From IMG/VR virus record IMGVR_UViG_3300037882_003354, positions 1 to 64,000 of that record: a stretch of DNA of 64,000 bases. One strand, 5' to 3'. This document shows, piece by piece, positions 3,631 to 56,461 of this stretch. Below the pieces are notes generated by a model. It did not search any database, was not told the origin of the DNA, and saw nothing but the letters and a program-made list of their open reading frames with translations. The translations under genes and the position numbers were made by a program. Numbering within the stretch: position 1 is the first letter of the stretch; the number at the start of each line of letters is the position of its first letter.

Positions 3631-3893
3631 ATAGGGAAGAACTGATCCGCATGGCGCGGGAGGCTGACCAATACGCTGACGACCACGCCCCGGCATGGAC
3701 TCAAACTCCGCAAGAATGGCAGGAGTTGCGCGATCACCGCTTTGCCACATTGGTCGCCGCTGCCGAGCGCGAAGCGTGTGCGAAGGTGTGTGATGAGTTT
3801 GCCGCGCATTACTGGGCTAAAGACGATGCTGTGGAGTCGGTGATCTACGAAGAATGCGCCGCCGCCATCCGCGCAAGGAGCAACAATGTTTAA
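3627..3893 (+). CDS. Phage hypothetical protein (IRMAREA...AEREACAKVC...AAAIRAR)
   Basis: Common phage small-ORF motifs. Confidence 0.75.
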   Translation: MNREELIRMAREADQYADDHAPAWTQTPQEWQELRDHRFATLVAAAEREACAKVCDEFAAHYWAKDDAVESVIYEECAAAIRARSNNV

Positions 3894-10514: not shown

Positions 10515-11108
10515 ATGTATTCAAATCTTGTACCCATGGTGGTAGAGCAATCGGCTCGCGGTGAGCGCGCCTTCGACATCTTCTCACGTCTGTTGAGCGA
10601 ACGAATTGTGTTCCTCAACGGGCAGGTGGACGAACAGTCGGCCAATCTGGTGGTGGCACAGATCTTGCACTTGGAGAGTTCAGATTCCGAGAAGGACATA
10701 CATTTGTACATCAACTCACCAGGCGGGGTCATCACGGCTGGCATGGCCATCTATGACGTCATGCAGTTTGTCAAGCCCGATGTGTGCACTTATGTCATGG
10801 GTCAGGCTTGTTCCATGGGCTCGTTCCTGGCGCAGGCTGGCACTCCGGGCAAGCGTTTTGTACTACCCAACTCCAGAACCATGATTCATCAGCCGTCGGG
10901 TGGTGCTCGTGGCATGGCCAGTGATATTGAAATTTCCTACAACGAAATCATGTACTGGAAGAAACGGCTGACTGAACTGTATGTCAAGCACAATACCCAG
11001 GGCAAGACCTACGAAGAATTTGAACGTAACATGGATCGTGACACCTTCCTGAGTGCCCAAGAGGCCCTGGACTTTGGGTTGTGCGACAAAATCATTCAGC
11101 AACGGTGA
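10515..11108 (+). CDS. clpP: ATP-dependent Clp protease proteolytic subunit
   Basis: [22 protein letters not shown] (catalytic Ser), [12 protein letters not shown]. Confidence 0.97.
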
Positions 11109-33788: not shown

Positions 33789-34223
33789 TTACTCCGATTT
33801 CAACTGGAGTTGTCGCGGCTTCAGAGACTCCGGAATCCTGCGATAGAGTGTGATGCTGAGCACGCCGTTCTTCACAGTGCCCTCACCCACCTCCATGTGC
33901 TCTGCCAGTGTCCAACTACGGGTAAAATCCCGTGTGGATAGTCCACGATGCAGATACTGGATGGACTCATCGTCAGGTTTGGTCCGTTGTCCTTTGACCA
34001 CCAATTGATTTTGATCAATCTCAACAGTGATCTCATCTGGCAAAAATCCCGTCACAGCGATTTCCAACTCGTAAGAATCTTCATCGTGTTTGAGAATGTT
34101 GTAGGGTGGATAACTGTTGTTGGCTTGAGTTGCGTGACGATTCTGAAAATCGTCAAACAAGGTGTCAAAACCCAGCAGGGCTCGGTTGAGCGAATTGGTG
34201 TCAAATCTAACTAATTGTGTCAT
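33789..34223 (-). CDS. Small heat shock protein (Hsp20/IbpA-like)
   Basis: YPPYNI, EIAVTGF, YLHRGLS.RDF, NGVLSI. Confidence 0.93.
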   Translation of the reverse strand: MTQLVRFDTNSLNRALLGFDTLFDDFQNRHATQANNSYPPYNILKHDEDSYELEIAVTGFLPDEITVEIDQNQLVVKGQRTKPDDESIQYLHRGLSTRDFTRSWTLAEHMEVGEGTVKNGVLSITLYRRIPESLKPRQLQLKSE

Positions 34224-35517: not shown

Positions 35518-36048
35518 TTATCTGGGTCGGATCTTGAGTTTGGCATAGATGTTCTGCACACCCACACTCTGACGGATGGCATCTTGTAGTGCATCATGCT
35601 TGCTGTTCTTGGGCATGTCAGGATCGTAACCCAGATCAAACAGCGTACGAGTGTCTCGCAATTGCCAGAAATTCCAGGGCAGGGGCTTGCCCAATTGACG
35701 GTAGATGTTTTCGATGATCACCAGGTCAAAAGTTGCACCGTGTGACCAGAAGGCATCGCAGCCCCAGGCAAATTTATGGAACCGATCCATGGCATCCACC
35801 AGACTGATGCGATCGTCAGGACTGAATGCTTCATCCTGAATGTCGGCAGCTTGCCGACCCCACCAATCCAGAGTGTCGGGATCCACCTCTCTGCCCAGCG
35901 CATCTTGATCGTCTATGCTGATACGGAAATAAATTTTATCACTGTATCCGTTGCCATAGGGGTTGAAATGTACTGCGCCTAAACTCAAGACCACAGCGTT
36001 GGGGGAAACTGCCAAGGTTTCCATATCTAGCATCAAATGTTTGGCCAT
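35518..36048 (-). CDS. DEDDh 3'-5' exonuclease (Rv2179c-like)
   Basis: MLDMETL, SLGAV, GATFD, RDTRT, HDALQD. Confidence 0.88.
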   Translation of the reverse strand: MAKHLMLDMETLAVSPNAVVLSLGAVHFNPYGNGYSDKIYFRISIDDQDALGREVDPDTLDWWGRQAADIQDEAFSPDDRISLVDAMDRFHKFAWGCDAFWSHGATFDLVIIENIYRQLGKPLPWNFWQLRDTRTLFDLGYDPDMPKNSKHDALQDAIRQSVGVQNIYAKLKIRPR

Positions 36049-37095: not shown

Positions 37096-37332
37096 TCAAT
37101 ATAATTTTTTAGGCAGCTCTTGTTCCCGCAATTGTTTGAGCCAGCGGGCTCGGGCAGCACCCTTTTTACGTTTACGTTCAGTGGTGGGCTTCTCATAGAA
37201 CATGCCGGATCTGACCACCTCCAGGGTGCCGTTGTCTTCAATCAATTGCTTGAATTTACGCATGGCCACCGTGAGTGGTAGATCCCCCACCGTTATGCTT
37301 GATCCGCGTGTGTTGATTTTATTCCGCTTCAT
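37096..37332 (-). CDS. rpsU: Ribosomal protein bS21
   Basis: AMRKFK...[16 protein letters not shown]. Confidence 0.88.
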
Positions 37333-38548
37333 CGTCTGAATTTTCTTCGAATGTCATGGCAGCTGGCTGGCCAGTCACAGTGTCTTTGTTTACACAGATG
37401 CTTTTAAGACCCCGCTCCACTAGATTGACGGCATCAAATTGATAGGGCAACAGCGCACGCTCTATGATGTTCTTCAGGCCACGAGCATTGGTCTTCAATT
37501 CCTTGGCACGTTCTGCTATGTGAGTCAAGGCTGACTCTTCAAAAATTAGATCAATACCATCCAGCTCAAACATGTATTGATACTGGCGGATCAGACTGTT
37601 CTTGGGTTCTTTCAGCACGGTCACCAGATCGTCCACAGACAGTTCATCCACATTGGTTATCAGACCAAAACGTCCAACAAATTCTGGAATGAAACCAAAC
37701 TGTATGATGTCCTTGGTGGTCACCTGCTGATAAACTTTACTGTTGTTTTCCAAGTTGGCCACTGATGCATGAAAACCAATGCTGCGACTTTCCAGACGCT
37801 TGCTGATGATTTTGTCCAGGCCCACAAATGCACCACCACAGATGAACAGCATGTTGCGAGTGTCAATTTCTTGCATGTCACCACCGGGATGTTTGCGCTT
37901 GCCCGAATGCGGTACTCTGACAATGCCTCCCTCGATCATTTTAAGCAGGGCCTGCTGTACACCCTCTCCACTGACGTCGCGAGTGATGCTCATGTTTTCA
38001 CCCTTGCGAGCAATCTTGTCGATTTCGTCGATGTAAACAATGCCTCGGCTGGCCCTTTCAACGTCACCGTCGGCAGCGTTGATCAATCTGAGTATGATGC
38101 TTTCCACATCGTCGCCCACATAGCCGGCTTCTGTGATGCCAGTGGCGTCGCAGATGGCGAATGGTAGATCCAGGTAGTCGGCTATCTTTCTGGCCATGAG
38201 AGTTTTCCCGCAGCCAGTGGGCCCCAACAGCAACACGTTGGTTTTTTCCAACTCAATGTCCTTGCTGGGATTGTTGATGCGTTTGAAATGCTGGCTCACA
38301 GCCACACTGAGCACTGTCTTGGCATCTTCTTGGCCCACCACATAGTCGTCCAGGTAGTCCTTGATGGCAGTGGGATTCAGGGTCCGTTTCTCTGTGGGGT
38401 CGGCTTTACCTTTTTCATCATCCAGGATGCCCACACACAGACTGATACAATCGTTACAAATGGCGGCGTGCTCGCCCACGATTAGTTTTTCCACGTCTTC
38501 TTTGCTTTTTCCGCAAAAATCACACACATGATTAAGTTGTTTAGCCAC
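37319..38548 (-). CDS. clpX: Clp protease ATP-binding subunit
   Basis: CDFCGK zinc-binding domain; GPTGCGKT; IDEIDK; [12 protein letters not shown]; RKHP; IGF loop. Confidence 0.97.
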
Positions 38549-41378: not shown

Positions 41379-42368
41379 GAGATTTTCCTTGAAGATGTTC
41401 CAGCAATGGTCCCAACTCCATTGCCGACTGTGCCGCTCCACCTGCTGTCTGTCCAGGGTCAGGCACTGATTGATGGCCCTGCGGAGATCCTGGTCTAGAC
41501 ATCCAGTGACACCTGACTCAATGATGTCCAGAGGGCCAGGCACAGGATATGCAGCCACCGGTGTACCCACTGCAAGTGCCTCGATGATCACCACCCCAAA
41601 CGTATCGTGGCGGCTGGTGAACACAAATACATCTGCCTGTGCGTAATACCGTGCCAGGCTGGTGCCTGTTTTTGCTCCGGTAAAAATAACATCGGGGTAA
41701 CGACTTTTCAGCTGGTTCAAGTATGGACCATCGCCCACCACTATCTTGGTGGCACCCGGATAGTACAGATTGCAGAAGTCATCCAGACCCTTCTCCTTGC
41801 TGATGCGGCCCACGCTGAGTAATATGGGACGGCCAGCCACTGTGGTGCCGCGCAGACTACTCTGAAATACATCACGATCCACACCCCGCGTCCAGGGAAT
41901 GATGTCACCGTCAAATCCGTGAGATCTGAGATCATTGACCATGGTCTGGGTGGTGGTCAGTACCCGTCCACTATGCTTGTGAAACCAGCGCACATACCAA
42001 TAGGTCATGAACATGGGAATGCCATAGATCTTTTTTAGGAATTCGGGAAATTTAGTATGATAGGAAGTGTTATAGCGCCGGCCACACAGATCCATCCAGC
42101 AACGTGCCGCCAGGCCAATAGGCCCCTCCGTAGCAATATGTATGTGATCAGCCCCCACCGCCGCAATCTTCTTGCCAATGCGCCAGGGCCAACTGAGTTT
42201 AACTTCAGGATAACCAGGGGTACTAATATGAGGGAACTGCCGGGGATCAAGATAAACAATATCGTACCCGTCATGACCTGCGCATATCTCAATGTTTTTG
42301 AACGTGGTGACAACGCCATTTAGTTGGTCAGGTAGATTGTCTGTTATTACTAGTATCTTTTTTCTCAT
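41373..42368 (-). CDS. GT4 glycosyltransferase, Agt-like diacylglycerol glycosyltransferase
   Basis: ITD...QLNGVVTT, YPEVKL, HIATEGPIG, YHTKFPE, RGVD, VGRISKEK, DTFGVVIIEALA. Confidence 0.85.
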   Translation of the reverse strand: MRKKILVITDNLPDQLNGVVTTFKNIEICAGHDGYDIVYLDPRQFPHISTPGYPEVKLSWPWRIGKKIAAVGADHIHIATEGPIGLAARCWMDLCGRRYNTSYHTKFPEFLKKIYGIPMFMTYWYVRWFHKHSGRVLTTTQTMVNDLRSHGFDGDIIPWTRGVDRDVFQSSLRGTTVAGRPILLSVGRISKEKGLDDFCNLYYPGATKIVVGDGPYLNQLKSRYPDVIFTGAKTGTSLARYYAQADVFVFTSRHDTFGVVIIEALAVGTPVAAYPVPGPLDIIESGVTGCLDQDLRRAINQCLTLDRQQVERHSRQWSWDHCWNIFKENLV

Positions 42369-43125
42369 CTTGTTCTGTTGTCCAAGTTATGATTTCCCAT
42401 GTGCCGTCATGATGTTCCACCAGGGCTGTGCATGATTCCACCCAGTCGCCATCATTCATGTAGGTGACGCCGTCTATTTCTTTTATTTCAGCATGGTGTA
42501 TGTGACCACAGATGACCCCATCATATCCACGCTTCTTGCAGTAGGCAGCCAGATTTTTTTCAAATCGGAATATGAAATCCACTGCCTTCTTCACACGTTG
42601 CTTGAGATACTGGCTCAGGCTCCAGTAACCAAATCCCAGGCGATGACGCAGCCAATTGAATTTGGTATTGAAACTCAGCATGAAATCGTAGGCTTTGTCG
42701 CCCAGGAACACCAGCCAGGGCGCCAGTCTGGTGATGCCATCAAATAAATCTCCGTGGGTCACCAGATAATGCTTGCCGTCCAGTCCAATATGCTCCACTT
42801 GGTTGGCTATTTCGATATTGCCAAATCCAATGTCATAGGGCATGAGCGGTCTTAAGAATTCATCGTGGTTACCGGCAATATAAATTACTCGGGTGCCGCG
42901 CTTGGAATGTCCAAGTATGCGTCGAACCACATTGGTGTGGCTTTGTTTCCATCGCCATTTGTTTTGTTGAATCTTCCAAATGTCCAGGATGTCGCCCACC
43001 AGATAAAGCGTTTCGCAGGTGTTGTGTTTGAGAAAGTTGTTGAGTTTGTCTGCTTGACAATCTCTTGTACCTAAGTGCACATCACTGATTGCTATTGTCC
43101 TATATTTTTTTTTATTTTTTGGCAT
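42328..43125 (-). CDS. LpxH-family metallophosphoesterase, PlcP-like phospholipase C
   Basis: ISDVHLG, LVGDILD.W, GNHDE, HGDLFD, CGHIH, NDGDWVESCTALVE. Confidence 0.85.
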   Translation of the reverse strand: MPKNKKKYRTIAISDVHLGTRDCQADKLNNFLKHNTCETLYLVGDILDIWKIQQNKWRWKQSHTNVVRRILGHSKRGTRVIYIAGNHDEFLRPLMPYDIGFGNIEIANQVEHIGLDGKHYLVTHGDLFDGITRLAPWLVFLGDKAYDFMLSFNTKFNWLRHRLGFGYWSLSQYLKQRVKKAVDFIFRFEKNLAAYCKKRGYDGVICGHIHHAEIKEIDGVTYMNDGDWVESCTALVEHHDGTWEIITWTTEQDEKKDTSNNRQST

Positions 43126-45032: not shown

Positions 45033-45182
45033 TCAAACCTTGGCAGGTTCGCTGGCAACAGGTGCTGCAGGTACTGTAGGCACCTCAAAGGCTGGTGCAG
45101 GTGCGGCCTCAGGTGCCTTGCCACAAGCGACAAGAGCAGCAGCGGCGATCAGGGTGGCGATAGTAGTTACAATTGATTTCAT
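45033..45182 (-). CDS. Small lipoprotein
   Basis: MKSIV...ALVACGK lipobox; Ala/Pro-rich; GGAG RBS. Confidence 0.7.
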   Translation of the reverse strand: MKSIVTTIATLIAAAALVACGKAPEAAPAPAFEVPTVPAAPVASEPAKV

Positions 45183-45267
45183 GTTTTCTCCAGGGTTATG
45201 AAATGTCACATGTATAATGTAGCATGATGTCATGATTAATGCTAGTGTTTTTTAAAATATTTTCATC

Positions 45268-45580
45268 AAAAGAATGGGCCCCGAGGAACCCATTCACTAT
45301 TTCCTGTTTCTAGGGATAGTTCCCCAATGATGGTTTAAGCGGCCATCAAATATGCATCATCATTAGCTGCATTTAAAGGTTTTGCTTGATTGACAGTCAT
45401 CGCCTACTGTGTTGCCTGCTCCACTATCTCGCGCAATCGAAAACCTGGTCATCCCCATCAAAAGCACTCCCACGGTTTATCTGTCCGTTGCCAGCATACT
45501 ATGTACCTGGATGAAAATGCTTTTGGTGGAGATGGGCGGAATCGAACCGCCGTCTTGCCCGCCTTTGTTTTGCCGGAATT
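45268..45580 (-). ncRNA. ssrA: Circularly permuted (two-piece) tmRNA gene
   Basis: Acceptor piece GGCGGTTCGATTCCGCCCATCTCCACCA ends at 45524 and precedes the coding piece starting GGGGATG at 45456; G3-U70 pair; tag ORF 45370-45335 AANDDAYLMAA*; terminator 45268-45295. Confidence 0.92.
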
Positions 45581-45602
45581 ACAACAATTAAGAATATTTA
45601 GT

Positions 45603-46094
45603 CTACACTGGTTTGCCGTCTGCGTCAACTTCCACCCAGGTGTAATCTCCCAACCACATGACTCGGGCAATGTACTCATATTCGTCAGGAATGAACCAAT
45701 GGTCAGGATCAGTGATCACCAGCCGAGTAATGTTTTTCCTGGAATCAAAAACCAACCAGTAGGGTCGGCCGTGGCACACCTGAAACTGGTATTCAGCAGC
45801 ATGCACCTGATCTGTGATCATCAAGCGACGCTGAATGGCCTGCGCCTGTCGTTCCAGCACCCGTACCATGTCCATGATTCTGTCATACTCTTGCTGTGCG
45901 TACATCCTGGCCACATTGAGCATGACGTCCTTCTGCTGGGTCACTGGCACCAGATCAAACTTAGGACCACCTGCTTCAGTGGGGTAGGGACTCACATTCC
46001 TGTTGAAGAACGTCACCATGGCACCGTCGATTCGGGCGTCGTAACTGGTCCGGCCCTTGGCCAGATTGGATTTTTCTTCAGGATCAGGGTTCAT
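45603..46094 (-). CDS. DUF2452-like protein
   Basis: YPTEAGGPKF..VPV; QQEYDRI. Confidence 0.65.
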   Translation of the reverse strand: MNPDPEEKSNLAKGRTSYDARIDGAMVTFFNRNVSPYPTEAGGPKFDLVPVTQQKDVMLNVARMYAQQEYDRIMDMVRVLERQAQAIQRRLMITDQVHAAEYQFQVCHGRPYWLVFDSRKNITRLVITDPDHWFIPDEYEYIARVMWLGDYTWVEVDADGKPV

Positions 46095-46209
46095 GAATTG
46101 TTCTATTCGGTTGGCGGACTCCCTGGGGCGGCTGGGTCCTCCGCCTAGACAAGTAGCCTCTCACTACCACAATTGGCTATGCCAATTTACCCCCAAAGAT
46201 CTAGTTTAT

Positions 46210-47106
46210 TTACGCATTGGCGAGATCGTACAATCCCGCAACACCAGGGCCCTTGCAGTTTTTATCATTCATGAATGTAAACACCTGCTTCCTGTTGCCA
46301 TCTTTGTTAAAACTAATATGGTGCCAGGGGTTTTTACTTCCGGTGGTTTTATATTCTAACAAGAACTGATCGAAGGCGATGTTATCCTTGATCCATTGTG
46401 CTCTGATGAAATAATCTGCCTTGGTGGCCTTGGAATATTGAATGTCGCAAGCCATGCCCAAGGGATGTTGACTGGTACCGTTGCCCTTGCGTAATCGAAA
46501 AGAGTTAGTCATAAAGGCATCGGGATACTCTGCTTTGATGGGGTCATAACAGTTGATCACCAGTAGTCTCAAGTTGTCCACCACTGATTGAACTGTGACA
46601 CCATTTTGTATGGCCACAGTGGCCACATCGTAGGGAAATGTCACACCCGGTGCCTTGGTCACAGTTTTGACGTAATACGTGATTCCAGTTGCTTCGCTGA
46701 TATATAGTACTGTGTCATCAACTGACGTGGCCAATGTCACACTGCCTGTGGTGGTGGCAGTGGTGGTGGCTGTGGAGGCCGGAGTGGTATCCACGTTGGT
46801 GGCACTGACGGCGGCATTGTCACCTGCACTGAGGTCAGCCTGAGTTATAGTACCAGCGGCAATCAATTTCTGTTGTTGTACTTGTACCTCTGCTTCATTG
46901 GTTTCCCCGTCTAATTCAGCAGTGGCTGCATCAACTTTGTATGATGGACTGTTGATCAATGCCAATGATGCGGCCTCTGAACCCTGCGGATCGTTCCATA
47001 ATGCCACAGGCACAAAGTTAGCGTATACATTGTCACTGTGATAGACATCGCTGACGGCCGGCAATCCGCTGTTTTTTTGCGCACCACCACCTTTAATATA
47101 GGGCAT
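46210..47106 (-). CDS. Peptidase M15 (Zn DD-peptidase fold) peptidoglycan hydrolase
   Basis: SFR...SQH..GMACD...WHHISF. Confidence 0.75.
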   Translation of the reverse strand: MPYIKGGGAQKNSGLPAVSDVYHSDNVYANFVPVALWNDPQGSEAASLALINSPSYKVDAATAELDGETNEAEVQVQQQKLIAAGTITQADLSAGDNAAVSATNVDTTPASTATTTATTTGSVTLATSVDDTVLYISEATGITYYVKTVTKAPGVTFPYDVATVAIQNGVTVQSVVDNLRLLVINCYDPIKAEYPDAFMTNSFRLRKGNGTSQHPLGMACDIQYSKATKADYFIRAQWIKDNIAFDQFLLEYKTTGSKNPWHHISFNKDGNRKQVFTFMNDKNCKGPGVAGLYDLANA

Positions 47107-47118
47107 GTTGTTATCCTG

Positions 47119-47412
47119 TTATCTCAGGGCAATGCCTGTGGTGCCGGTCAGGTACTGATCTGCGGCTTCTTTCTTGCTTATGACCATGACGAACACATGC
47201 TCTCGCTTGAGAGAAAATGTTTCAGTGTCACCCAGGAACAACCAGGGAATCATGCCCAGTCCATTGGCGCCCATGGTCAATGCCAGGGGGCGATTGATGG
47301 TGATGGTACCATCATCTTCACTCTCGTAACGTGCAATGATTTCATCACCATTGACCAATTTCATGCTGACCACCGATCCCGGTGTAATTTGCTTTTGTAA
47401 TAACATGTTCAT
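47119..47412 (-). CDS. Sm-like phage protein
   Basis: VSMKLVNGDEIIAR...RPLAL...GMIPW. Confidence 0.6.
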   Translation of the reverse strand: MNMLLQKQITPGSVVSMKLVNGDEIIARYESEDDGTITINRPLALTMGANGLGMIPWLFLGDTETFSLKREHVFVMVISKKEAADQYLTGTTGIALR

Positions 47413-47567
47413 CCTTTGTTGTTGGCTATTCTTACTATCTCGTTTCTACGTCGACCGTTCTCTCTTTCCAAGAAATCGGTTCGTTGAATTAATTTACTGC
47501 ACAGGTCCATCAATTGCCGGACCTGTTGTTCAAGTTTTGCAATTTTTTGATCACGTGGATCAGTCAT
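47409..47567 (-). CDS. Small coiled-coil protein
   Basis: MTDPRDQKIAKLEQQV; coupled on both sides. Confidence 0.55.
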   Translation of the reverse strand: MTDPRDQKIAKLEQQVRQLMDLCSKLIQRTDFLERENGRRRNEIVRIANNKG

Positions 47568-47958
47568 GTTTCTGATCCGTGGGAATTTCGCACAGTGCTT
47601 CCAGTGTCTTGTAGTGTGCGTATGCTTTCTGCAGACTCTGGAAGTGTTCCAGTTTCTTGGGGTCGGGTACCAGGATGGCCATTCTTTTTTCCATGCTTTC
47701 CATGAAATCTCGCATGCTGCGTCCATCAATGATCACATCCCGGTCTGCGCGGATTACGCCGTAATCTTTATTGAATGAGTTCGTATCAAAATAACCGTCG
47801 TACCCCAGCCCACCTGAACCACTGGAACCACCAGTGCCCAATGTGTTGATGGTAACATGACCACCAGCACCCACTGCTCCAGTGTTGGCAGCATAATTGC
47901 TTGATGAAGTACATGCACCAGGCGGATAAAAGACGTCTGTATTAATAATGGTGTTCAT
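47560..47958 (-). CDS. Hypothetical protein
   Basis: IDGRSM...EKRMAILVPD...LQKAY..YK.LE. Confidence 0.7.
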   Translation of the reverse strand: MNTIINTDVFYPPGACTSSSNYAANTGAVGAGGHVTINTLGTGGSSGSGGLGYDGYFDTNSFNKDYGVIRADRDVIIDGRSMRDFMESMEKRMAILVPDPKKLEHFQSLQKAYAHYKTLEALCEIPTDQKHD

Positions 47959-48011: not shown

Positions 48012-49382
48012 CTATACTAAGAACCCCAAATTAGGTTTCGAGAATCTTCCAATGTTGGGCACGACGGTGGACAAGTCTGAGGCAGGCACGCCAAACCAGG
48101 ATGCGAGGGTGGCCGCATATTCATCCACAGAGGTGGTGGGGATCAATCGACCCTGTCCAGCGTCCTCCGGACTACCTATAGCAACTGTTGGGAAATTACC
48201 GTAGATTCTATTTCCTAGAACTGCACCACCCATAATGAAGTGATGACTACCCCATCCGTGATCTGATCCTTGACCATTGCCCTGCAGGGCACGACCAAAC
48301 TCCGATGCTGTAAAGCTGGTCACACTTTCAGATATGCCCATGGCAACGGTCGCCTGATAGAACGCTGTCATGGCGTCGGAAAGTTCCTTCATTCTGACTG
48401 CATGATCATTTACGAGATTAGCGTGTAAATCGTTACCACCCATGTTAACAAAAAATATCTGTCTCTTTTGCGACAATCCACCTCTGGCACCAATCAAACG
48501 AGCCACCATCCTCAATTGCCTACCAAGATTTGTATCAGGGAATAGTGTACTTGCGGGTACATTAGATAAAGCATTAGTAACCAAGACCTCTGTGGAAATA
48601 GCTCTGGTTGACACTTTATTCAGCTCGTTTTCTAGTAGGCTACTTCGTGGATCCGTGATAAGTTTTCTCATAGCAGGACCAATAGATGGAGCATGATATG
48701 CTCCATTTGCTAAAGCATATACTTTGATCGCACCTCCCACGGAACACTGATACTGGATGGTGTTATTTCCGATTTGCATAGTATTATTACCAGCAACGGA
48801 TATTGCAATAGACACTCCACTGCCTGGATTGAATGCACTGTTGGTTAAGTCTCCGATACGTCCCAACCATCCCGTACTGGAGGCACGGTCTGGCAAGCCA
48901 GTTTGCCAGGCGCGAGTTTGATCTGAGTGGGAGAACAGTTGAAATGGTAGATCTACGCTGCCATTTTTGTACTGTGTTTTTGTTGTTGGAACGCAAAGTG
49001 GCCCAACATTGGCAAGTACGGCGAGATTTTCCTGATCGAATACGGATTTTAGGCCGCCCATCGATCCGTTGAATGCTAGAGTAGGACCATTCCATCCAGA
49101 AGGACTGATCTGCTGGAGACCAGAGACGGGCAGGGCAAGAGCTCCTCTGCCTTTGGCGTAGAGGTCGTACTCTGCCGCGCTGACGGGGACGATGGTGTTT
49201 GACTGATCGTTGCCGCCACCGAGGTAGATGCAAACCAGAGCCTTGTAGTCGCTGGCCTGCTGTGCGCTGGCTGCACCCATGGCAAGCAGGTTGGCCGCGA
49301 ATGGCGTCCCGGCCAGAGCACTAATTTTTGAAAATTTCTGGAGGAATTGACGGCGATTGGCTGCATTGAATGTGTTTGTCAT
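48012..49382 (-). CDS. DUF1501 family protein with a Tat signal
   Basis: NRRQFLQ + hydrophobic + ASA; DYKALVCIYLGGGND, SHSDQ, SEFGR, GSDHGWG, GRLIPTTSVD. Confidence 0.93.
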   Translation of the reverse strand: MTNTFNAANRRQFLQKFSKISALAGTPFAANLLAMGAASAQQASDYKALVCIYLGGGNDQSNTIVPVSAAEYDLYAKGRGALALPVSGLQQISPSGWNGPTLAFNGSMGGLKSVFDQENLAVLANVGPLCVPTTKTQYKNGSVDLPFQLFSHSDQTRAWQTGLPDRASSTGWLGRIGDLTNSAFNPGSGVSIAISVAGNNTMQIGNNTIQYQCSVGGAIKVYALANGAYHAPSIGPAMRKLITDPRSSLLENELNKVSTRAISTEVLVTNALSNVPASTLFPDTNLGRQLRMVARLIGARGGLSQKRQIFFVNMGGNDLHANLVNDHAVRMKELSDAMTAFYQATVAMGISESVTSFTASEFGRALQGNGQGSDHGWGSHHFIMGGAVLGNRIYGNFPTVAIGSPEDAGQGRLIPTTSVDEYAATLASWFGVPASDLSTVVPNIGRFSKPNLGFLV

Positions 49383-49390
49383 GGTGTCTC

Positions 49391-51571
49391 CTATTTTTGT
49401 GTGATAAATTCTGGTGACACCATAGTCAGCAACACAGCAGCGGCAACTCTAGTGTGACCTGAATCCCTAGTTGCCGGAATGGTGTTTATTACATTGATGA
49501 TCGTTTGTTTGGTGGAACTACTCATTCGACCTGCAGTGAGAAGCAAGTTCAAACGATCTACAAGTGCCACTGGGTTCGAGGCTAGGGCCATTTCCACGCT
49601 GTAGTCAGCACCGAGATAGTGATCAACCGAGCCATATTTAATGGCGACGTTATCTCTCCACCAATTGGTTTGCCGTTCCGCTATGTTAGTAATAAAGTTG
49701 TCATAGCCTGTTACTGTGGTTTCATGGGTTATAGCGAACTCCGGTGCTACCAGACCTCTATTCATGATTTCACCTGGTGGTGAATAAGTAGGGCTAAACC
49801 AGTTGAAAACGCTTGGGGCTCTTAGAGGGTTTTGGCCTATGCTTGATACAGGATCTTCGAGATTCCAGATCTTGTAATACCCACTGGTGGCCTTGACATC
49901 AAAGGCGCGCATGAAGTTAGCATATCTGATCATCGGCTCGCGAAGTTTCCCCCACAACGGATCCGACACCTTGGAGGTATCTCGAGCCTCTGGGTCGAGC
50001 AACACGGCCTTGATCACCGCTTTCATGTCACCGCGCACGCCTTGGCCATTGTTGTTGAAGGCTGCTGTCACCCTCGAAACATAGGCTGGGCTCGGATTGC
50101 TGGTGACGAAACGCTTGATCAACTGGCTGCCAATGAAGGGCCCCACGTTGGGGTGGTTGAACAGGGTGTCCAGCGCGATCTTCAGACTTTGCTCTCCAGT
50201 GGTGCCTGCCGGGATGACGACACCCCTGATGATATTCTTTTCACTGGTGCTATGGTACTGTGGGTAATTGATCATTTGCTTACTCCAACTGTTATAGGTC
50301 ACGCTGCTCCAACCATTCCAGTCACTAGCCCAACTCCAGCCCGTGAAAACCTTGGCCATACCCATCACGTCGATCTGGTCGTAGGTGGGTATGTCCTTAC
50401 CATACGCATCTTTTTTTCTTGATCCGTCTGGGTTCAGTTCCCACAGACCTATTGAAAATAACTGCATCATCTCACGTGCAAAATTTTCATCAGGAATTCT
50501 GCCTGTTATTGGATCTTCTTTTATGTTCTTAAAATGAGACAAATAATGGCCCATTGTTGGGTGAGTTGCCACTTGTTCCAGCAGGGTGCGATAATTACCA
50601 AATGCATTACGAGACAGCATATCAAGATAGCTAGCGTGTGCGTCCTTTTGTACCTCTACTGCACTATTGACCGTGCTGACAACGAAGATCTCGCTGAGCG
50701 CAAAGACTAAACGCTGACGCAATTGGTCAGGTCCGACAACAGCTTGTCGCCAGAAACTTTCCATTACTGCGTTGATGTGCTCAGAATTACAAGGGTTGCA
50801 TCCTGGTGGCCCCTTGCGCTCCATCACATAGGTCCAGTGGGTTTCCAGGCTGGGTGTCACAAACTGGTTTTCAATCCACGCGGCCGGGCCGGACTGGGCC
50901 ACCGATGAAATGCTGCTCATGTTGGGACCGAAACTCGCCTGCACGAGAAAGCGCGCCGCTTCAGCTGGAGTTACAGAAGGAGGAGCAGGTGCTGGTTCTG
51001 GCGCAGGTGCTGGAGCAGGTGCTGGAGCAGGTGCTGGAGCAGGTGCTGGAGCAGGTGCTGGAGATGTACCTGGAACAAATCCCACTGGGTAATAACAGGC
51101 TTTTACTGTTCCAACAATTGGGTCTCCAAACACCCAGTTATTACAGCCAACTATAGGTGTTGTGAAGGTCTTGGTGACAAATTTACCAGCAGCACCATAC
51201 GAAATACTAACGGGTGCGCCAGGTGAGCAGATTCCATTTTCAGTAGCACACGGAGTTGTTGAGAATCCTGTGGGAGCTGTAGTTAGCACCGTTACTTCTG
51301 TGTAGCAGGATTTAGTTTTCGTGGTGGTTAAACGACCAAACGTCTGGTCGCTGCAAACGAACGTGGCTTCCCGCATTGACTTCAGGCGAAATTTGCCAGC
51401 AGCTCCGTAAAGTACCCTCGAGGCCTTTGGAAGCGTGCAAGTCTGACCCTCGACCGCGCAGGGGGTAGACGAAAACGTCATGCCTGCAAGCCTGAATGTT
51501 TCCGCAGATACTACTGGTGCCGCGTATCCAGCCAACACCAGAGATAATGTTAAAAGTATTTTAAGTTTCAT
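49391..51571 (-). CDS. Secreted DUF1800 family protein with two Cys-rich N-terminal modules and a PA linker
   Basis: Sec signal; AARFLVQASFG, DQLRQR..FALSEIFVVS, PDENFAREMMQLFSIGL, HPNVGPF, KLREP. Confidence 0.93.
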   Translation of the reverse strand: MKLKILLTLSLVLAGYAAPVVSAETFRLAGMTFSSTPCAVEGQTCTLPKASRVLYGAAGKFRLKSMREATFVCSDQTFGRLTTTKTKSCYTEVTVLTTAPTGFSTTPCATENGICSPGAPVSISYGAAGKFVTKTFTTPIVGCNNWVFGDPIVGTVKACYYPVGFVPGTSPAPAPAPAPAPAPAPAPAPAPEPAPAPPSVTPAEAARFLVQASFGPNMSSISSVAQSGPAAWIENQFVTPSLETHWTYVMERKGPPGCNPCNSEHINAVMESFWRQAVVGPDQLRQRLVFALSEIFVVSTVNSAVEVQKDAHASYLDMLSRNAFGNYRTLLEQVATHPTMGHYLSHFKNIKEDPITGRIPDENFAREMMQLFSIGLWELNPDGSRKKDAYGKDIPTYDQIDVMGMAKVFTGWSWASDWNGWSSVTYNSWSKQMINYPQYHSTSEKNIIRGVVIPAGTTGEQSLKIALDTLFNHPNVGPFIGSQLIKRFVTSNPSPAYVSRVTAAFNNNGQGVRGDMKAVIKAVLLDPEARDTSKVSDPLWGKLREPMIRYANFMRAFDVKATSGYYKIWNLEDPVSSIGQNPLRAPSVFNWFSPTYSPPGEIMNRGLVAPEFAITHETTVTGYDNFITNIAERQTNWWRDNVAIKYGSVDHYLGADYSVEMALASNPVALVDRLNLLLTAGRMSSSTKQTIINVINTIPATRDSGHTRVAAAVLLTMVSPEFITQK

Positions 51572-53122
51572 GATTTAATATCCTTAATAACCAAGCATCT
51601 GATTTCCATCACCCAGATTGTTAGTATGACAATCTCTGCTGCGTTGATTGCAGTTCAACATCCAAGTATTTATCAAACCACTCCAACCATTCCACCAGTC
51701 TCCATGACCACTAAATCCACCAGGAGTTCCCATGGGATAGTTGTCTGAACTCAGTCTCCAGTAGGTGTCAATGCCAGGTTCTTTTACGGGGTAGTAGATA
51801 TTGAAAGCTATCTCAGTAAGAGGTACTGGATGTGTTGCTGGACAGCCAAAAGCAGGATAGGCCATGTGTGCCTTGTGGTCTGGACTGTCTAGATTAACTC
51901 CATCCCAACACTGTGGAAATTGCACACCCATTACCATTGTGCTTCCAACTGGACAATTGGGTATTGACTTGCCACGAGGTGGTGCAGTCATACCAGCGGG
52001 AACACCCTGACACTCATAGGTAACTTTTGACGAAGTGGCAGAATCCACAGCCTTCATGTTACCAGCAATCATTCTTAATCCTACTGGCAGTGGCTGAATT
52101 AAACTAGGTGGAATATAGCTATATCCAGTCTTGTAGTAAATTTGATTGCCCCTTGCCTGGATCGGAGTATTAGTACGAGTATCGATCATGGTGGGAACCC
52201 AATACGAACTACGATTGGCGATACCACCACCACAGGTGGAATTGCCTGTGTTGGTCAGACTGTCAGTGGTACTGAACGCATCTGCTCCGGTATTTCCAAA
52301 GAAGGTGTGGAGATGTGATGCTCCGTTCTGGCCAGGGTATATGATGGGATCGTTAAATCCCATGTGGCTGTAACCACACATCATTCTGAAAGCACCAATG
52401 TTACTAGTGGTAATATCGTCCGTTGCGTGAAATTTCAAACGTAAATCGCTAAAGCCAGAGGCTCTTTTGGGCACTTGATTGATGTCTACAACGGGCATAT
52501 CGCCCATTTTCATGCTGAGATTTTGTGCAGTGCTGGCTGGCGTAAACACCTGGCATTCCTTCAGGTCATTATGCCAATAACCCAAATAACCATGAGAGCA
52601 GGTTCCACCCAGTGTGTCCTGACGATAGAACCACTTGCCGAGTCCATCACCCCAACGGACCATTTTGGTGCCTTCAAATGAGTATGGTTGGTTAAGCAAA
52701 GCAACACGGCTCCAAGTGCCTGGTGGGATATCTGGCAGTACATTATGCGACATCATTGACATGGGTACCTCTGGCATGACAAGTGGTACCACAACAGGTA
52801 ATGCCGCTACTGGAATATAGCAATGCTTTATCTTGCCAGGGGCGGGATCACCACCAAAAGTAGTGTTGTTACAAGTGACAACTTGACCAGCTAGGAAAGT
52901 TTTGATCGTATACGGACCTGCAGGTACCAGATCAAATGCTACAACAGGGCCATATGCAATAATGGTATCAATACTAGGAGTACATTTACGACCCCATTCA
53001 TCACCACAACTAGCAATGGAAAACTCATGACCACCGTAACTAAACGTTGGTTTAACTGGAGCAGGTGCGGGAGCAGGTGCGGGAGCAGGTGCGGGAGCAG
53101 GTGCGGGAGCAGGTGCGGGAGC
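50984..53122 (-). repeat. 12-bp tandem repeats encoding (PA)n linkers at ~50984-51062 and ~53058-53122
   Basis: GGAGCAGGTGCT and GGAGCAGGTGCG arrays on the + strand. Confidence 0.85.
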
Positions 53123-53404
53123 CTCTATATAACAGGCTTTCTCTGATTTTGTTGTAGTCCTACCAAACGTCTTGTCGCTGCAAATGAAGGTACCTACCGG
53201 AATAGACTTCAGGCGAAACCTGCCAGCCACTCCGTAAAGCACCCTAGATTTATACGGAACAGTACATTGTTCACCCTCCACAGCACAAGGTGTAGATAAG
53301 AATGTCATCCCAGCTAACCTGAATGTTTCCGCAGATGCTGCGGGCATCGAGTAAGTCGCTAGCAGCAGAGGGATAGTTGATAAGATTGTTCTTAGTTTCA
53401 TGTT
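51584..53404 (-). CDS. Secreted DUF1996 domain protein
   Basis: DPIIYPG..GASHLHTFFGN, NRSSYWVP, GLRMIAG, FPQCWDGVNLDSPDHKAHMAY, HGDWWNGW. Confidence 0.88.
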   Translation of the reverse strand, partial: NMKLRTILSTIPLLLATYSMPAASAETFRLAGMTFLSTPCAVEGEQCTVPYKSRVLYGVAGRFRLKSIPVGTFICSDKTFGRTTTKSEKACYIEAPAPAPAPAPAPAPAPAPAPAPVKPTFSYGGHEFSIASCGDEWGRKCTPSIDTIIAYGPVVAFDLVPAGPYTIKTFLAGQVVTCNNTTFGGDPAPGKIKHCYIPVAALPVVVPLVMPEVPMSMMSHNVLPDIPPGTWSRVALLNQPYSFEGTKMVRWGDGLGKWFYRQDTLGGTCSHGYLGYWHNDLKECQVFTPASTAQNLSMKMGDMPVVDINQVPKRASGFSDLRLKFHATDDITTSNIGAFRMMCGYSHMGFNDPIIYPGQNGASHLHTFFGNTGADAFSTTDSLTNTGNSTCGGGIANRSSYWVPTMIDTRTNTPIQARGNQIYYKTGYSYIPPSLIQPLPVGLRMIAGNMKAVDSATSSKVTYECQGVPAGMTAPPRGKSIPNCPVGSTMVMGVQFPQCWDGVNLDSPDHKAHMAYPAFGCPATHPVPLTEIAFNIYYPVKEPGIDTYWRLSSDNYPMGTPGGFSGHGDWWNGWSGLINTWMLNCNQRSRDCHTNNLGDGNQMLGY

Positions 53405-53412
53405 AGTCCTCA

Positions 53413-53754
53413 TTAGGGCATGGTCTTTGATACTTCGTTTGAATAAGCACTTTCCATACCAGCACGATCAATGGCAGTCACAGCGAAGTAATATGTATAT
53501 CCTGTGGTGAGACCCACAACGGTATAATTAACCTTTCGAGAATACATACCACTGCCCGACGGCTGGTCATATGTGCCTGGTTTTGTTCCGTAGTACACAC
53601 GGTATCCACTGATTGCTTCAGCAGGTGCCACCCAGGTCAATGCAGCAGTATTAGGCGCATGGGGTCGTCGACGATGAGCATGGCTGGGGTCAGTGACCAT
53701 CAAACTGGTACTGACCAAAACCAGGCTTGCCATCAATCGTGTCCAGGATCTCAA
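53413..53754 (-). CDS. Secreted fibronectin type III protein
   Basis: LTW...GYRVYYG...YTVVGL..G.TYYFAVTA.D..G.ES.YSNEV. Confidence 0.85.
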   Translation of the reverse strand: MRSWTRLMASLVLVSTSLMVTDPSHAHRRRPHAPNTAALTWVAPAEAISGYRVYYGTKPGTYDQPSGSGMYSRKVNYTVVGLTTGYTYYFAVTAIDRAGMESAYSNEVSKTMP

Positions 53755-55810: not shown

Positions 55811-56461
55811 TTAGTATTTCCCGCTGGCTAAAATGATCTTGCAAATATGTGATAGGCGTTCAATATGCTCATAAGCACGCCAGGGGCTGGTGTCAATGGC
55901 CACAACTCCGTGCCCTTTAATACCAACTATGTCGTAGGCAATGTTGCCATTTTTATCCAACTGTAGATTTTCGTGGCAACGATCAGCAAGCTCTTGGCTG
56001 ATGGGAGGCACATCTCCCACGTTGGGAGCCACCCTGGTATAGCGATTGAGTTCTGGAAATGCACGACTGATGGTGCTCAAATCAATACCGGCATGCATGG
56101 CCGCAATACAGTAAGTGGGGTGAACATGCACCACCACCCTGACATCCTTTGCATATTGCCCCAATTCCCTTTGCAGTCCAAAGTGCAAGGGTAGTTCTCC
56201 ACTGGGCCGTAGATTTTTACTGATTTCAGTGTACTCCAGCTCCCTGCAGGAATAATGCAATCGAGGCGGCTGGTCGTAGAAACCCTGCTCAATGCCAATC
56301 TTCTTGAACTGATCAGGTTGTAGCGTTTGCTTGCGAACACCGCTGGGAGTAATGTAAAAGTGATCACGGTCGTGATGTCGTATGCTCACATTACCATCAC
56401 GGCTGGTGATCCAATTACGCTTGTATGCGTCTACTAATATATCACATATGGTTTCTAACAT
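55811..56461 (-). CDS. Class II aldolase/adducin family protein
   Basis: DGNVSIR, ITPSG, PSGELPLH, VVHVHP, GHGVVA. Confidence 0.88.
   Translation of the reverse strand: MLETICDILVDAYKRNWITSRDGNVSIRHHDRDHFYITPSGVRKQTLQPDQFKKIGIEQGFYDQPPRLHYSCRELEYTEISKNLRPSGELPLHFGLQRELGQYAKDVRVVVHVHPTYCIAAMHAGIDLSTISRAFPELNRYTRVAPNVGDVPPISQELADRCHENLQLDKNGNIAYDIVGIKGHGVVAIDTSPWRAYEHIERLSHICKIILASGKY

What the first reader, a model, noticed from the sequence alone, without database searches (positions are those of the whole stretch)
45268..45580. Circularly permuted two-piece tmRNA in a phage
Seen on the - strand: T-arm plus CATCTCCACCA come first. A 67-nt intervening segment follows, whose ends pair (AAAGCATTTTC/GGGAGTGCTTT). 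Then come GGGGATG (7-bp acceptor stem with G3-U70), the resume context TTAAAT-GCA, tag AANDDAYLMAA*, a small pseudoknot-like element and a terminator. Known: permuted ssrA occurs in alphaproteobacteria, some betaproteobacteria and cyanobacteria, and some mitochondria; the phage tmRNAs I know of are mostly one-piece. This one is compact, with a very short acceptor piece, is invisible to the ORF track, and hints at host lineage or an independent permutation.
Basis: seen in the sequence. Interest (0 to 1): 0.85.

Follow-up and report, generated by a model that had tools for sequence, protein, structure and literature searches.

The report
Two-piece tmRNA gene in huge phage
A 322-kb phage carries a complete, circularly permuted (two-piece) tmRNA gene for rescuing stalled ribosomes; the call is correct, but such genes are already known in phages and prove to be common there, so it is a good annotation and not a discovery.

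Summary
ARAGORN calls a permuted tmRNA with tag AANDDAYLMAA. Rfam gives beta_tmRNA (RF01850) 139.5 bits against a threshold of 84, over the full model, and tmRNA_permuted 115.7 bits. The window is bases 1-64000 of IMG/VR contig 3300037882_003354 (322,512 bp). That contig has tail fibres, homing endonucleases, an Acb3 anti-CBASS gene, RNR, ClpP and ClpX, so it is a huge phage.

The interpretation needs trimming in three places:
- It is not an independent permutation. It fits the known beta class.
- It is not rare. Two pattern scans found more than 200 IMG/VR contigs with related genes. Cultured Stenotrophomonas (Marzo) and Pseudomonas (UF_RH6) phages carry the same class, and Marzo's was published as beta-class.
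- It is a poor host marker for the same reason.

Modestly new:
- The phage copies form their own clade, split from Rhodocyclaceae tmRNAs with support 0.98.
- They are more diverse than the bacterial copies.
- Their intervening hairpin is longer and covaries (median 68 vs 28 nt).
- They encode CCA (138/144 vs 8/106).

Most likely function: trans-translation in infected cells, with tagged proteins passed to ClpXP.

The parts
45600..45628 (-). Sigma-70-like promoter, TTGACG-17 nt-TAGACT. It overlaps the last codons of the upstream ORF 45603-46094.
   Evidence: 9 of 12 matches. It aligns with the UUGA...UAuAAU block at the 5' end of the Rfam beta_tmRNA model. A consensus match only; the transcription start (about 45594) is inferred.
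45524..45594 (-). Acceptor piece (the 5' end is inferred): P2 5' strand, T-arm, acceptor 3' strand, discriminator A and an encoded CCA.
   Evidence: RF04321 starts at 45586.
45555..45586 (-). P2 5' strand: UGUUG 45586-82, CC and GC near 45576-72, CGGGCAA 45561-55.
   Evidence: Rfam structure line. Across 35 phage homologues P2a is 99% paired and P2d 99% paired, with 6 of 7 P2d pairs showing double changes.
45535..45551 (-). T-arm: GGCGG / UUCGAUU / CCGCC.
   Evidence: 100% paired in 35 homologues, with 4 of 5 pairs showing compensatory changes.
45524..45534 (-). Acceptor 3' strand CAUCUCC (45534-28), then discriminator A and CCA (45527-24).
   Evidence: Pair 5-68 occurs as AU 83, GC 40, CG 24 and GU 1 in 148 unique viral copies. 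G3.U70 is invariant.
45457..45523 (-). Intervening segment, 67 nt, removed on maturation. It has an 11-bp closing stem, and the UGAU leader lies opposite ACCA.
   Evidence: fold; the stem is 92% paired in 35 homologues, and 10 of 11 pairs show double changes. The sequence itself is not conserved.
45268..45456 (-). Coding piece, from G1 (45456) to the terminator U-run.
45450..45456 (-). Acceptor 5' strand GGGGAUG. G3 pairs with U70, the alanine identity element.
45410..45436 (-). P2 3' strand: UUGCGCG 45436-30 and GGCAACA 45416-10.
45387..45410 (-). PK1. Stem 1 is (A)CAG 45410-07 with CUG(U) 45396-93. Stem 2 is loop UGA 45399-97 with UCA 45389-87.
   Evidence: S1 is 95% paired and S2 97% paired in 35 homologues. 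All 3 pairs in each stem show double changes (for example UGA/UCA changing to CGGA/UCCG). Slid controls give 0.37 or less.
45335..45370 (-). Tag reading frame: GCA GCU AAU GAU GAU GCA UAU UUG AUG GCC GCU UAA, giving AANDDAYLMAA*. It is preceded by UAAAU.
   Evidence: The same tag occurs in two other metagenome contigs that are 99.5% identical.
45296..45325 (-). Small 3' H-type pseudoknot: GGGG 45325-22 with UCCC 45316-13, and ACUA 45320-17 with UAGU 45299-96.
   Evidence: Stem 2 is 84% paired with double changes at all 4 pairs. Stem 1 is poorly aligned in A1, so support for it is weaker.
45268..45295 (-). Intrinsic terminator: a 10-bp stem followed by UUUU.
   Evidence: The only difference from L326/L328 in this element (45288, U to C) turns a G.U pair into G-C.
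37319..38548 (-). Phage ClpX homologue. It is the likely unfoldase for tagged proteins. The functional link is inferred, not shown.
   Evidence: Pfam zf-C4_ClpX, AAA_2 and ClpB_D2-small. It is 50-53% identical to ClpX of the jumbo phages Atu_ph07 and Phosso.
10515..11108 (+). Phage ClpP homologue. The functional link is inferred.
   Evidence: Pfam CLP_protease, 260 bits. It is 64% identical to the Atu_ph07 ClpP.

Best explanation
This is a complete, expressed-looking gene for a circularly permuted, two-piece tmRNA of the beta structural class, carried by a huge (322 kb or more) phage.

Inferred mechanism:
1. One precursor is transcribed from the promoter at 45628-45600 to the terminator at 45272.
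2. The tRNA-like fold forms: a 7-bp acceptor stem with G3.U70, plus the T-arm. The 67-nt intervening hairpin is then excised. Host RNase P cuts 5' of G45456, and 3' trimming stops at the encoded CCA.
3. This leaves an acceptor piece of about 65-70 nt and a coding piece of about 189 nt. The acceptor stem and the roughly 20-bp P2 helix hold them together.
4. Host AlaRS charges the RNA with alanine.
5. With host SmpB and EF-Tu it enters ribosomes stalled on broken mRNAs during infection.
6. Translation resumes at GCA 45370 and appends (A)AANDDAYLMAA. The ribosome is released at UAA.
7. The tagged fragment is degraded by ClpXP, possibly the phage's own ClpX and ClpP.

Shown here: the gene anatomy, class membership, its position in a phage, conservation and covariation across many phages, and that three contigs from different samples carry the gene at 99.5% identity, one of them (L326) in the same flanking-gene context. 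Inferred: processing, charging, trans-translation and the link to ClpXP.
For: Detection: ARAGORN permuted tmRNA with tag; RF01850 at 139.5 bits and RF04321 at 115.7 bits, both full length.

Functional elements are all intact: G3.U70, the UUCGAUU T-loop, encoded CCA, the UAAAU-GCA resume context, an in-frame tag ending in a hydrophobic residue then Ala-Ala, its own promoter-like site and a terminator.

Selection on structure. In 148 unique viral copies acceptor pair 5-68 switches among AU, GC and CG with a single GU, and G3.U70 never varies. In 35 homologues the T-arm, P2, PK1 and the intervening stem are 92-100% paired with many double changes.

Selection on the message. Most of the 79 distinct viral tag calls keep the AND....(L/I/M)AA pattern; about 20 are longer variants with other cores and a few are unrelated ARAGORN calls.

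Phage context. The window is 100% identical to IMG/VR contig 3300037882_003354 (322,512 bp). It has collagen-like tail fibres, homing endonucleases, Acb3 and RNR.

Synteny. Related viral contigs keep the tmRNA next to the same metallophosphoesterase, glycosyltransferase and endolysin-like genes. L326 and L328, from other samples, carry it at 99.5% identity.

Proteolysis partners. ClpX and ClpP are encoded in the same window.
Against: There is no experimental evidence for expression, processing, alanylation or tagging.

No SmpB was found among the 60 ORFs scanned of the 92 called in the window (the ORF set is). The other 258 kb of the contig could not be read, so the RNA would depend on host SmpB.

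This copy is a divergent member. It has one G.G mismatch in P2d, and it lacks the local CCUUC/GAAGG hairpin most relatives have. Its Rfam score is 139 bits against 150-177 for most relatives (the closest two, L018 and L032, score 130 and 136).

The -10 hexamer is weak (TAGACT), and promoter-like hits are no commoner here than in shuffled sequence.

Met at position -3 of the tag is uncommon. Whether ClpX accepts ...MAA was not tested.
Confidence: 0.8

Rival explanations
1. It is a decoy or inhibitor. The RNA titrates host SmpB, or competes with host tmRNA, to shut down or redirect host trans-translation. The TLD-only RNA of mycobacteriophage DS6A is proposed to act this way.
For: No SmpB gene was seen in the window. 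The DS6A precedent and inhibition by TLD-like RNAs are described in PMC4131195 and PMC11915505.
Against: The tag frame is intact, in frame and conserved in pattern across hundreds of phage copies, as are the resume context and PK1. A pure decoy would not need them. DS6A lost its coding part and this gene did not.
Confidence: 0.08
2. It is a passenger: a host ssrA gene recently picked up, for example by imprecise excision of an ssrA-integrating prophage, or an attP remnant. It would have no role for the phage.
For: ssrA is a frequent integration site, and fragments of it occur in prophages (PMC9004378). Three IMG/VR contigs do carry host-like copies with a short intervening segment and Rhodocyclaceae tags.
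Against: The gene is complete, not a 3' fragment, and has its own promoter-like site and terminator. Its best bacterial match in the sample is only 69% identical, against 77-83% for viral copies. It falls in a phage-only clade with support 0.98. Structure covaries within that clade. Synteny is kept across related phages. No Pfam family of any kind, integrase included, hit the flanking ORFs.
Confidence: 0.04
3. It is a functional tmRNA whose main use is to re-aim proteolysis. The altered tag (extra Ala, ...YLMAA) would send tagged proteins to the phage's own ClpXP and not to host proteases or adaptors. Possible purposes are recycling amino acids or destroying products of host defence RNases.
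For: ClpX, ClpP and Hsp20 are encoded in the same 64 kb. Phage tags are far more varied than the bacterial ones (79 tag variants against 15). Bacillus phage G also has both a tmRNA and a ClpX.
Against: Co-occurrence was seen only in this window and in phage G, and was not tested statistically. The genes lie 7 and 34 kb from the tmRNA. Marzo and UF_RH6 were not among the 25 ClpX or 25 ClpP hits listed, out of 254 and 1504 records. The tag still resembles standard ssrA tags.
Confidence: 0.08

Closest known systems
Betaproteobacterial two-piece tmRNA (Rfam RF01850; Rhodocyclaceae such as Azonexus/Dechloromonas, Thauera, Azoarcus, Accumulibacter; Sharkady & Williams 2004 as cited in PMC9004378)
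   Same: Same gene order: acceptor piece, intervening segment, coding piece. Same P2 layout, PK1 hairpin, single 3' pseudoknot, terminator and promoter position. Full-length match at 139.5 bits. The tag is of the same ANDxxxAxAA type.
   Different: At most 69% identical. It lies on the other side of a 0.98-supported split. The intervening segment is 67 nt with about 21 bp, against a bacterial median of 28 nt with 9 bp. CCA is encoded, whereas bacteria mostly have C or U after ACC. The leader is UGAU, against GGU in bacteria. The tag has an extra Ala and ends in LMAA. It is carried by a phage.
tmRNAs of cultured phages: Stenotrophomonas phage Marzo and other Menderavirus (annotated; called beta-class in PMC8928761), and Pseudomonas Samunavirus (UF_RH6, SM1, PaMx31; unannotated in the UF_RH6 record)
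   Same: Permuted, above the RF01850 threshold (94.6 and 104.4 bits). Long intervening hairpin (58 and 113 nt), encoded CCA and a (C/U)UGAU leader. Marzo's also lies near a metallophosphohydrolase and nrdA.
   Different: The sequences are too far apart for blastn from this copy; they were found only from a more typical relative. Tags differ (VAANDDSYTVRIAA, ANDTSFDVRLAA). The phages are much smaller (about 93 and 160 kb) and of different morphotypes.
Alpha-type two-piece tmRNAs of marine phages (OM43 phage Melnitz, pelagimyophages; PMC9004378)
   Same: A phage-borne, permuted ssrA in a lytic-type large phage. There too, the tmRNA type does not match the host's.
   Different: A different structural class (alpha). 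Melnitz's gene carries a glutamine riboswitch, and no other Rfam family was found in this window.
Caulobacter crescentus two-piece tmRNA (Keiler, Shapiro & Williams 2000, as cited in PMC9004378)
   Same: The experimentally validated model for how a permuted precursor becomes two base-paired RNAs that work in trans-translation. The mechanism proposed here is copied from it.
   Different: Alpha class, chromosomal and experimentally shown. Nothing has been shown experimentally for this gene.
One-piece phage tmRNAs (mycobacteriophage Bxz1 group, Bacillus phage G; PMC4131195)
   Same: A phage-encoded ssrA in large phages. Phage G also encodes ClpX.
   Different: Standard, unpermuted gene form.

Membership tests
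tmRNA (ssrA) in general | tRNA-like domain: 7-bp acceptor stem with G3.U70, T-arm with a UUCGA-type loop, and a 3' ACCA. | tested here: met
tmRNA (ssrA) in general | A short internal reading frame with no start codon. It resumes on an Ala codon, ends in hydrophobic-Ala-Ala and has a stop. | tested here: met
   GCA...UAA at 45370-45335, AANDDAYLMAA*.
tmRNA (ssrA) in general | A long P2 helix joining the tRNA-like and mRNA-like parts, and PK1 upstream of the resume codon. | tested here: met
   (covariation in P2 and in both PK1 stems).
tmRNA (ssrA) in general | Alanylation, SmpB and EF-Tu binding, and tagging of stalled nascent chains. | not testable with these tools
   Needs biochemistry or infected-cell data.
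Permuted (two-piece) tmRNA, Rfam RF04321 | Gene order of acceptor 3' half first, then an intervening segment, then the 5' half with the coding part. Score at or above the gathering threshold. | tested here: met
   115.7 bits against 47, model positions 1-213. ARAGORN marks it tmRNA*.
Permuted (two-piece) tmRNA, Rfam RF04321 | The precursor is cleaved into two RNAs that stay base-paired. | not testable with these tools
   Inferred from the anatomy and from the covarying excision hairpin.
beta_tmRNA, Rfam RF01850 | Score at or above the curated gathering threshold over the class-specific model (P2 layout, PK1 hairpin, 3' hairpins). | tested here: met
   139.5 bits against 84, model positions 1-331, E 1.5e-42.
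beta_tmRNA, Rfam RF01850 | Belongs to the betaproteobacterial (Rhodocyclaceae) lineage that gives the family its name. | tested here: not met
   It is phage-borne. It sits in a phage clade split from 103 of 104 sampled bacterial copies with support 0.98. So it is a member by structure and score, not by lineage. The bacterial sample was capped at 120 hits of one pattern.
beta_tmRNA, Rfam RF01850 | Typical, not defining: a short intervening segment (about 25-30 nt) and a 3' A of CCA that is not encoded. | tested here: not met
   67 nt and an encoded CCA. Phage clade: median 68 nt, CCA encoded in 138 of 144. Bacterial clade: median 28 nt, 8 of 106.
attP / ssrA fragment of an integrating element | Only a 3' fragment of ssrA, nearly identical to the host gene, next to an integrase. 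| tested here: not met
   The gene is complete with a promoter-like site and terminator. It is at most 69% identical to bacterial copies. The flanking ORFs hit no Pfam family at all, so no integrase domain was seen.

The most novel reading that the evidence does not exclude
Phage-borne beta-class tmRNAs are not strays from Rhodocyclaceae. They form a large, old, phage-maintained lineage with its own hallmarks: a long covarying excision hairpin, an encoded CCA and a UGAU leader. This lineage moves between unrelated phages (a huge phage, T4-like Menderavirus, siphoviral Samunavirus). It is more diverse than the bacterial clade (mean identity 0.71 against 0.85), and under midpoint rooting the bacterial clade nests 10 nodes inside it. 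The 'third lineage' of permuted tmRNA in Betaproteobacteria could therefore have begun as a phage gene that replaced the host's one-piece ssrA.
Probability: 0.15. Interest if true: 0.7.

Novelty: new member of a known kind. Interest (0 to 1): 0.3.

Why it matters
For this genome it is a sound annotation of a gene that ORF callers miss. It sits with ClpX, ClpP and Hsp20, so the phage appears to bring its own protein quality-control kit.

More widely, it warns against using the tmRNA class to guess a phage's host. The beta class occurs in phages of Pseudomonas and Stenotrophomonas, and in this huge phage whose host is unknown.

The phage copies make up a big, distinct and little-described clade with a longer processing hairpin and an encoded CCA. 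That clade could be used to study how permuted precursors are processed. Marzo and UF_RH6 are culturable entry points. It also allows a proper test of whether the betaproteobacterial two-piece form came from phages.

None of this changes what is known about what tmRNA does.

Tried and rejected
- blastn (distant mode) of this tmRNA against 50,697 GenBank phage records found nothing. A more typical relative (L047) had to be used as the query to reach Marzo and UF_RH6.
- tblastn of the 1110-aa ORF 19234-22566 against those phage records found nothing, so the phage has no close cultured relative.
- Sharkady & Williams 2004 (PMC516066) is not held. The supplements of the 2025 tmRNA database paper had no phage table.
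- I did not use the count of structure pairs, to avoid typing a 484-character string. I counted pairs with my own script on alignment A1, with slid controls.
- The 3' pseudoknot stem 1 is misaligned in A1 (the slid registers pair better), so its support is weak.
- RNAalifold proposed a UAGGC/GCCUA pairing between the PK1 loop and the tag end. I rejected it as evidence because it shows no double changes and one side is fixed by the Ala-Ala-stop coding.
- Considered and rejected: an attP remnant, a recent host capture, and a spurious ORF origin. The + strand ORF 45390-46148 and the - strand ORF 45458-45679 simply overlap the RNA gene.
- Rooting the phage/bacterial tree with an outgroup was not attempted. 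Alpha-class and one-piece forms align only over the tRNA-like domain. Midpoint rooting is weak evidence.
- SmpB was not found in the 60 ORFs scanned with Pfam, of 92 called. The remaining small ORFs and the other 258 kb of the contig were not examined.

Full report
**1. The observation**

I read the - strand of 45100-45750. It contains, in order:
- a T-arm, GGCGG/UUCGAUU/CCGCC (45551-45535);
- the acceptor 3' strand CAUCUCC (45534-45528), then ACCA (45527-45524);
- a 67-nt segment (45523-45457) whose ends form the 11-bp stem AAAGCAUUUUC/GGGAGUGCUUU;
- GGGGAUG (45456-45450), which pairs with CAUCUCC to give a 7-bp acceptor stem with G3.U70;
- after a long stretch, UAAAU followed by GCA GCU AAU GAU GAU GCA UAU UUG AUG GCC GCU UAA (45370-45335);
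- a small pseudoknot (45325-45296);
- a 10-bp terminator hairpin with a U-run (45295-45268).

ARAGORN reports one gene in the whole window, a permuted tmRNA at 45244-45616 (-) with tag AANDDAYLMAA*. Rfam reports beta_tmRNA RF01850 at 139.5 bits (threshold 84, E 1.5e-42, model positions 1-331) and tmRNA_permuted RF04321 at 115.7 bits (threshold 47).

Three corrections apply:
The P2 5' strand starts at 45586.
- A TTGACG-17-TAGACT promoter-like site lies at 45628-45600. It aligns with the promoter block built into the Rfam model.
- The acceptor piece is therefore about 65-70 nt, normal for the class and not 'very short'.

**2. Is it in a phage?**

A scan of IMG/VR for a permuted-tmRNA pattern returned a locus 100% identical to the window (L060). 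It belongs to contig IMGVR_UViG_3300037882_003354, 322,512 bp. The coordinates coincide, so the window is bases 1-64000 of that contig.

The window holds about 92 tightly packed ORFs. They include:
- collagen-like tail fibre proteins and a virion structural protein;
- homing endonucleases and nrdA/nrdB;
- an Acb3 CBASS inhibitor, a GIY-YIG segE-like endonuclease and a bilin reductase;
- ClpP, Hsp20, SOD and QueD, and ClpX.

GC content is even across the window. Phage-type genes lie on both sides of the tmRNA. The ORFs flanking it hit no Pfam family at all, so no integrase domain was seen there. This is a huge phage, not a bacterial chromosome with a prophage at ssrA.

**3. Relatives**

The first viral scan found 103 contigs with a permuted arrangement. 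All 14 contigs tested pass the beta_tmRNA threshold, at 130-177 bits.

Several of them keep the tmRNA among the same neighbours as here:
- a metallophosphoesterase about 79% identical to ORF 42328-43125;
- a GT4 glycosyltransferase;
- the endolysin-like ORF 46210-47106;
- ORFs 47119-47412 and 47560-47958.

The gene is therefore a stable part of a phage lineage. A metagenome scan found two contigs from other samples with a 99.5% identical tmRNA and the same tag (L326, L328), and a 131-kb contig with an 81% relative. One of the two differences from L326/L328 turns a G.U in the terminator stem into G-C.

**4. Cultured phages**

Among GenBank phages this copy finds nothing by blastn. A more typical relative finds Stenotrophomonas phages of the genus Menderavirus and Pseudomonas phages of the genus Samunavirus.
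- Marzo's annotated tmRNA is permuted and scores 94.6 bits on RF01850.
- UF_RH6's copy is unannotated in that record, is permuted and scores 104.4 bits.
- The Marzo genome paper already says its tmRNA resembles the 'Betaproteobacter-class' (PMC8928761).
- Buchholz et al. 2022 counted 53 two-piece forms among 133 unique phage tmRNAs (PMC9004378).
- Huge phages are known to carry tmRNAs (PMC7162821).

So a two-piece tmRNA in a phage, and even a beta-class one, is not new.

**5. Bacterial relatives and host inference**

The hits were almost all Rhodocyclaceae: Azonexus/Dechloromonas, Thauera, Azoarcus, Propionivibrio and Accumulibacter. Their tags are ANDERFALAA, ANDEQFAIAA and similar.

I built a tree on the tRNA-like domain, P2 and the tag region, with the intervening segment removed. 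In it, 103 of 104 bacterial copies plus three host-like viral-contig copies fall on one side of a branch with support 0.98. On the other side are 143 viral copies plus one MAG contig that looks like a phage. This copy is 83% identical to its nearest viral relative (L018), 77% or less to the others, and at most 69% to any sampled bacterial copy.

The same class occurs in phages of Pseudomonas and Stenotrophomonas. Those genera lie outside the three bacterial lineages reported to have permuted tmRNA (PMC9004378, PMC11915505). That their own tmRNA is one-piece is my background knowledge and was not tested here; the Marzo paper even words its comparison as the beta-class tmRNA 'of S. maltophilia'. 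Given this spread, the class says little about the host. The host of this phage remains unknown.

**6. What sets the phage clade apart**

| Feature | Phage clade | Bacterial clade |
|---|---|---|
| Distance from ACC to G1 | median 68 nt (85 in the subset found without a length limit), range 27-209 | median 28 nt |
| Base pairs in the intervening fold | median 21 | median 9 |
| Base after ACC | A in 138 of 144, so CCA is encoded | A in 8 of 106, mostly C or U |
| Leader before G1 | (C/U/A)UGAU | GGU or GAU |

The phage clade is also more diverse, with mean pairwise identity 0.71 against 0.85. This gene, at 67 nt with an encoded CCA and a UGAU leader, is a typical member on these counts.

**7. 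Evidence that the RNA is under selection**

In 148 unique viral copies, acceptor pair 5-68 is AU 83, GC 40, CG 24 and GU 1. G3.U70 never changes, and the T-stem shows 11 Watson-Crick combinations.

Results from a 35-sequence alignment (A1), analysed with RNAalifold and my own pair counts with slid controls:

| Helix | Paired | Pairs with changes on both sides |
|---|---|---|
| P2a | 99% | 3 of 5 |
| P2d | 99% | 6 of 7 |
| T-arm | 100% | 4 of 5 |
| Acceptor stem | 100% | 1 of 7 |
| Intervening stem | 92% | 10 of 11 |
| PK1 stem 1 | 95% | 3 of 3 |
| PK1 stem 2 | 97% | 3 of 3 |
| 3' pseudoknot stem 2 | 84% | 4 of 4 |

The tag frame is open in nearly all copies, and most keep the AND...(L/I/M)AA pattern.

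This particular copy is somewhat divergent. It has a G.G mismatch in P2d, it lacks the local CCUUC/GAAGG hairpin seen in most relatives, and its tag has an extra Ala codon and ends in LMAA. Every element known to matter is still intact.

**8. Mechanism**

The best-supported reading is a working two-piece tmRNA. One precursor runs from promoter to terminator. The intervening hairpin is excised by RNase P at G45456 and by 3' trimming to the encoded CCA. The two pieces are held together by the acceptor stem and P2. Host AlaRS charges the RNA through G3.U70. It enters stalled ribosomes with host SmpB and EF-Tu, translation resumes at GCA 45370, (A)AANDDAYLMAA is added, and the product is handed to ClpXP.

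The phage encodes ClpX (37319-38548) and ClpP (10515-11108) in the same window. Their best matches are in the jumbo phages Atu_ph07 and Phosso. Bacillus phage G also has both a tmRNA and a ClpX. The link between tag and phage ClpXP is an inference. No SmpB was found in the 60 ORFs scanned of the 92 called.

I judge the rivals much less likely, for the reasons given in their entries:
- an SmpB decoy;
- a passenger gene or attP remnant;
- a tag variant meant to re-aim proteolysis.

**9. Verdict**

The call is right and the gene is real. It is a new member of a known kind, not a new kind.

The most novel reading still open is this: the phage clade is an old, self-maintained lineage, and the betaproteobacterial two-piece form descends from it. 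Under midpoint rooting the bacterial clade nests inside phage diversity. Faster evolution in phages could produce the same picture, and the bacterial sample was capped and filtered by one pattern. I give that reading about 15%.

Noticed in passing
window 10515-11108 (+), 37319-38548 (-), 33789-34223 (-): The phage encodes ClpP (Pfam 260 bits), a full ClpX (zinc finger, AAA+ and C-terminal domain) and an Hsp20 small heat-shock protein. Together with the tmRNA this makes a protein quality-control set. The best GenBank phage matches for ClpX and ClpP are Agrobacterium phage Atu_ph07 and Sinorhizobium phage Phosso (50-64% aa).
   Followed up: partly
window 48012-53413 (-): A cassette of DUF1501, DUF1800 and DUF1996 proteins, which are typical bacterial families. 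It is absent from the closely related contig L326, which runs straight from the equivalent of 47948 to nrdB at 54018. So it is an insertion here or a deletion there.
   Followed up: partly
window 3886-4716 (+): A strong match to Acb3, a CBASS inhibitor (PF25187, 154 bits), which is a phage counter-defence gene.
   Followed up: no
window 32226-32972 (-): A ferredoxin-dependent bilin reductase homologue (PF05996, 60 bits). As far as I recall, this kind of auxiliary gene is best known from cyanophages and other aquatic phages, so it may hint at habitat or host.
   Followed up: no
window 16803-17372 (+), 11402-11914 (+), 35518-36048 (-), 55811-56461 (-): Other auxiliary genes: Fe/Mn superoxide dismutase, a QueD/PTPS-like enzyme, an Rv2179c-like 3'-5' exoribonuclease and a class II aldolase.
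   Followed up: no
L119, L178, L182 (Cupriavidus), L183 (Pseudomonas indica NBRC 103045): Isolates of genera that I would expect, from memory, to have one-piece tmRNA carry a Rhodocyclaceae-type permuted tmRNA (tags ANDERFALAA and ANDERFAVAA, short intervening segment). This could be a second ssrA on a mobile element.
   Followed up: no
L214 (CALMJT010000228.1, 'Alteromonadales' MAG, 46-kb contig): The one 'bacterial' hit that falls in the phage clade. It has a 148-nt intervening segment and tag ANDSTYALAA. It is probably a phage contig binned into a MAG.
   Followed up: no
L325 1477-1897 (Pseudomonas phage UF_RH6, OQ383211.1): A permuted beta-class tmRNA (RF01850 104.4 bits, tag ANDTSFDVRLAA, 113-nt intervening segment) is not annotated in this GenBank record. 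No tmRNA feature is listed under the blast matches in SM1, vB_PaeS_FBPa45 or PaMx31 either; only UF_RH6 was run through ARAGORN and Rfam.
   Followed up: partly
viral loci such as L017, L264, L228, L251, L327: Some phage copies encode much longer tags (26-30 aa, for example AKANTGEVTVSGKNVKFSARTAQRQSLAV and ANANTTESRVVLDLSALEDSDMMIAA). They still end in a hydrophobic-Ala-Ala/Val motif. Their purpose is unknown.
   Followed up: no
alignment A1 columns 28-32 / 51-55 (window 45576-45562): Most phage copies can form a local hairpin CCUUC-loop-GAAGG in the acceptor piece (85% paired). It competes with the P2b/P2c pairs of the Rfam model. This copy and L018 cannot form it and keep the P2b/P2c pairs instead. 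Which fold is used is unresolved.
   Followed up: partly
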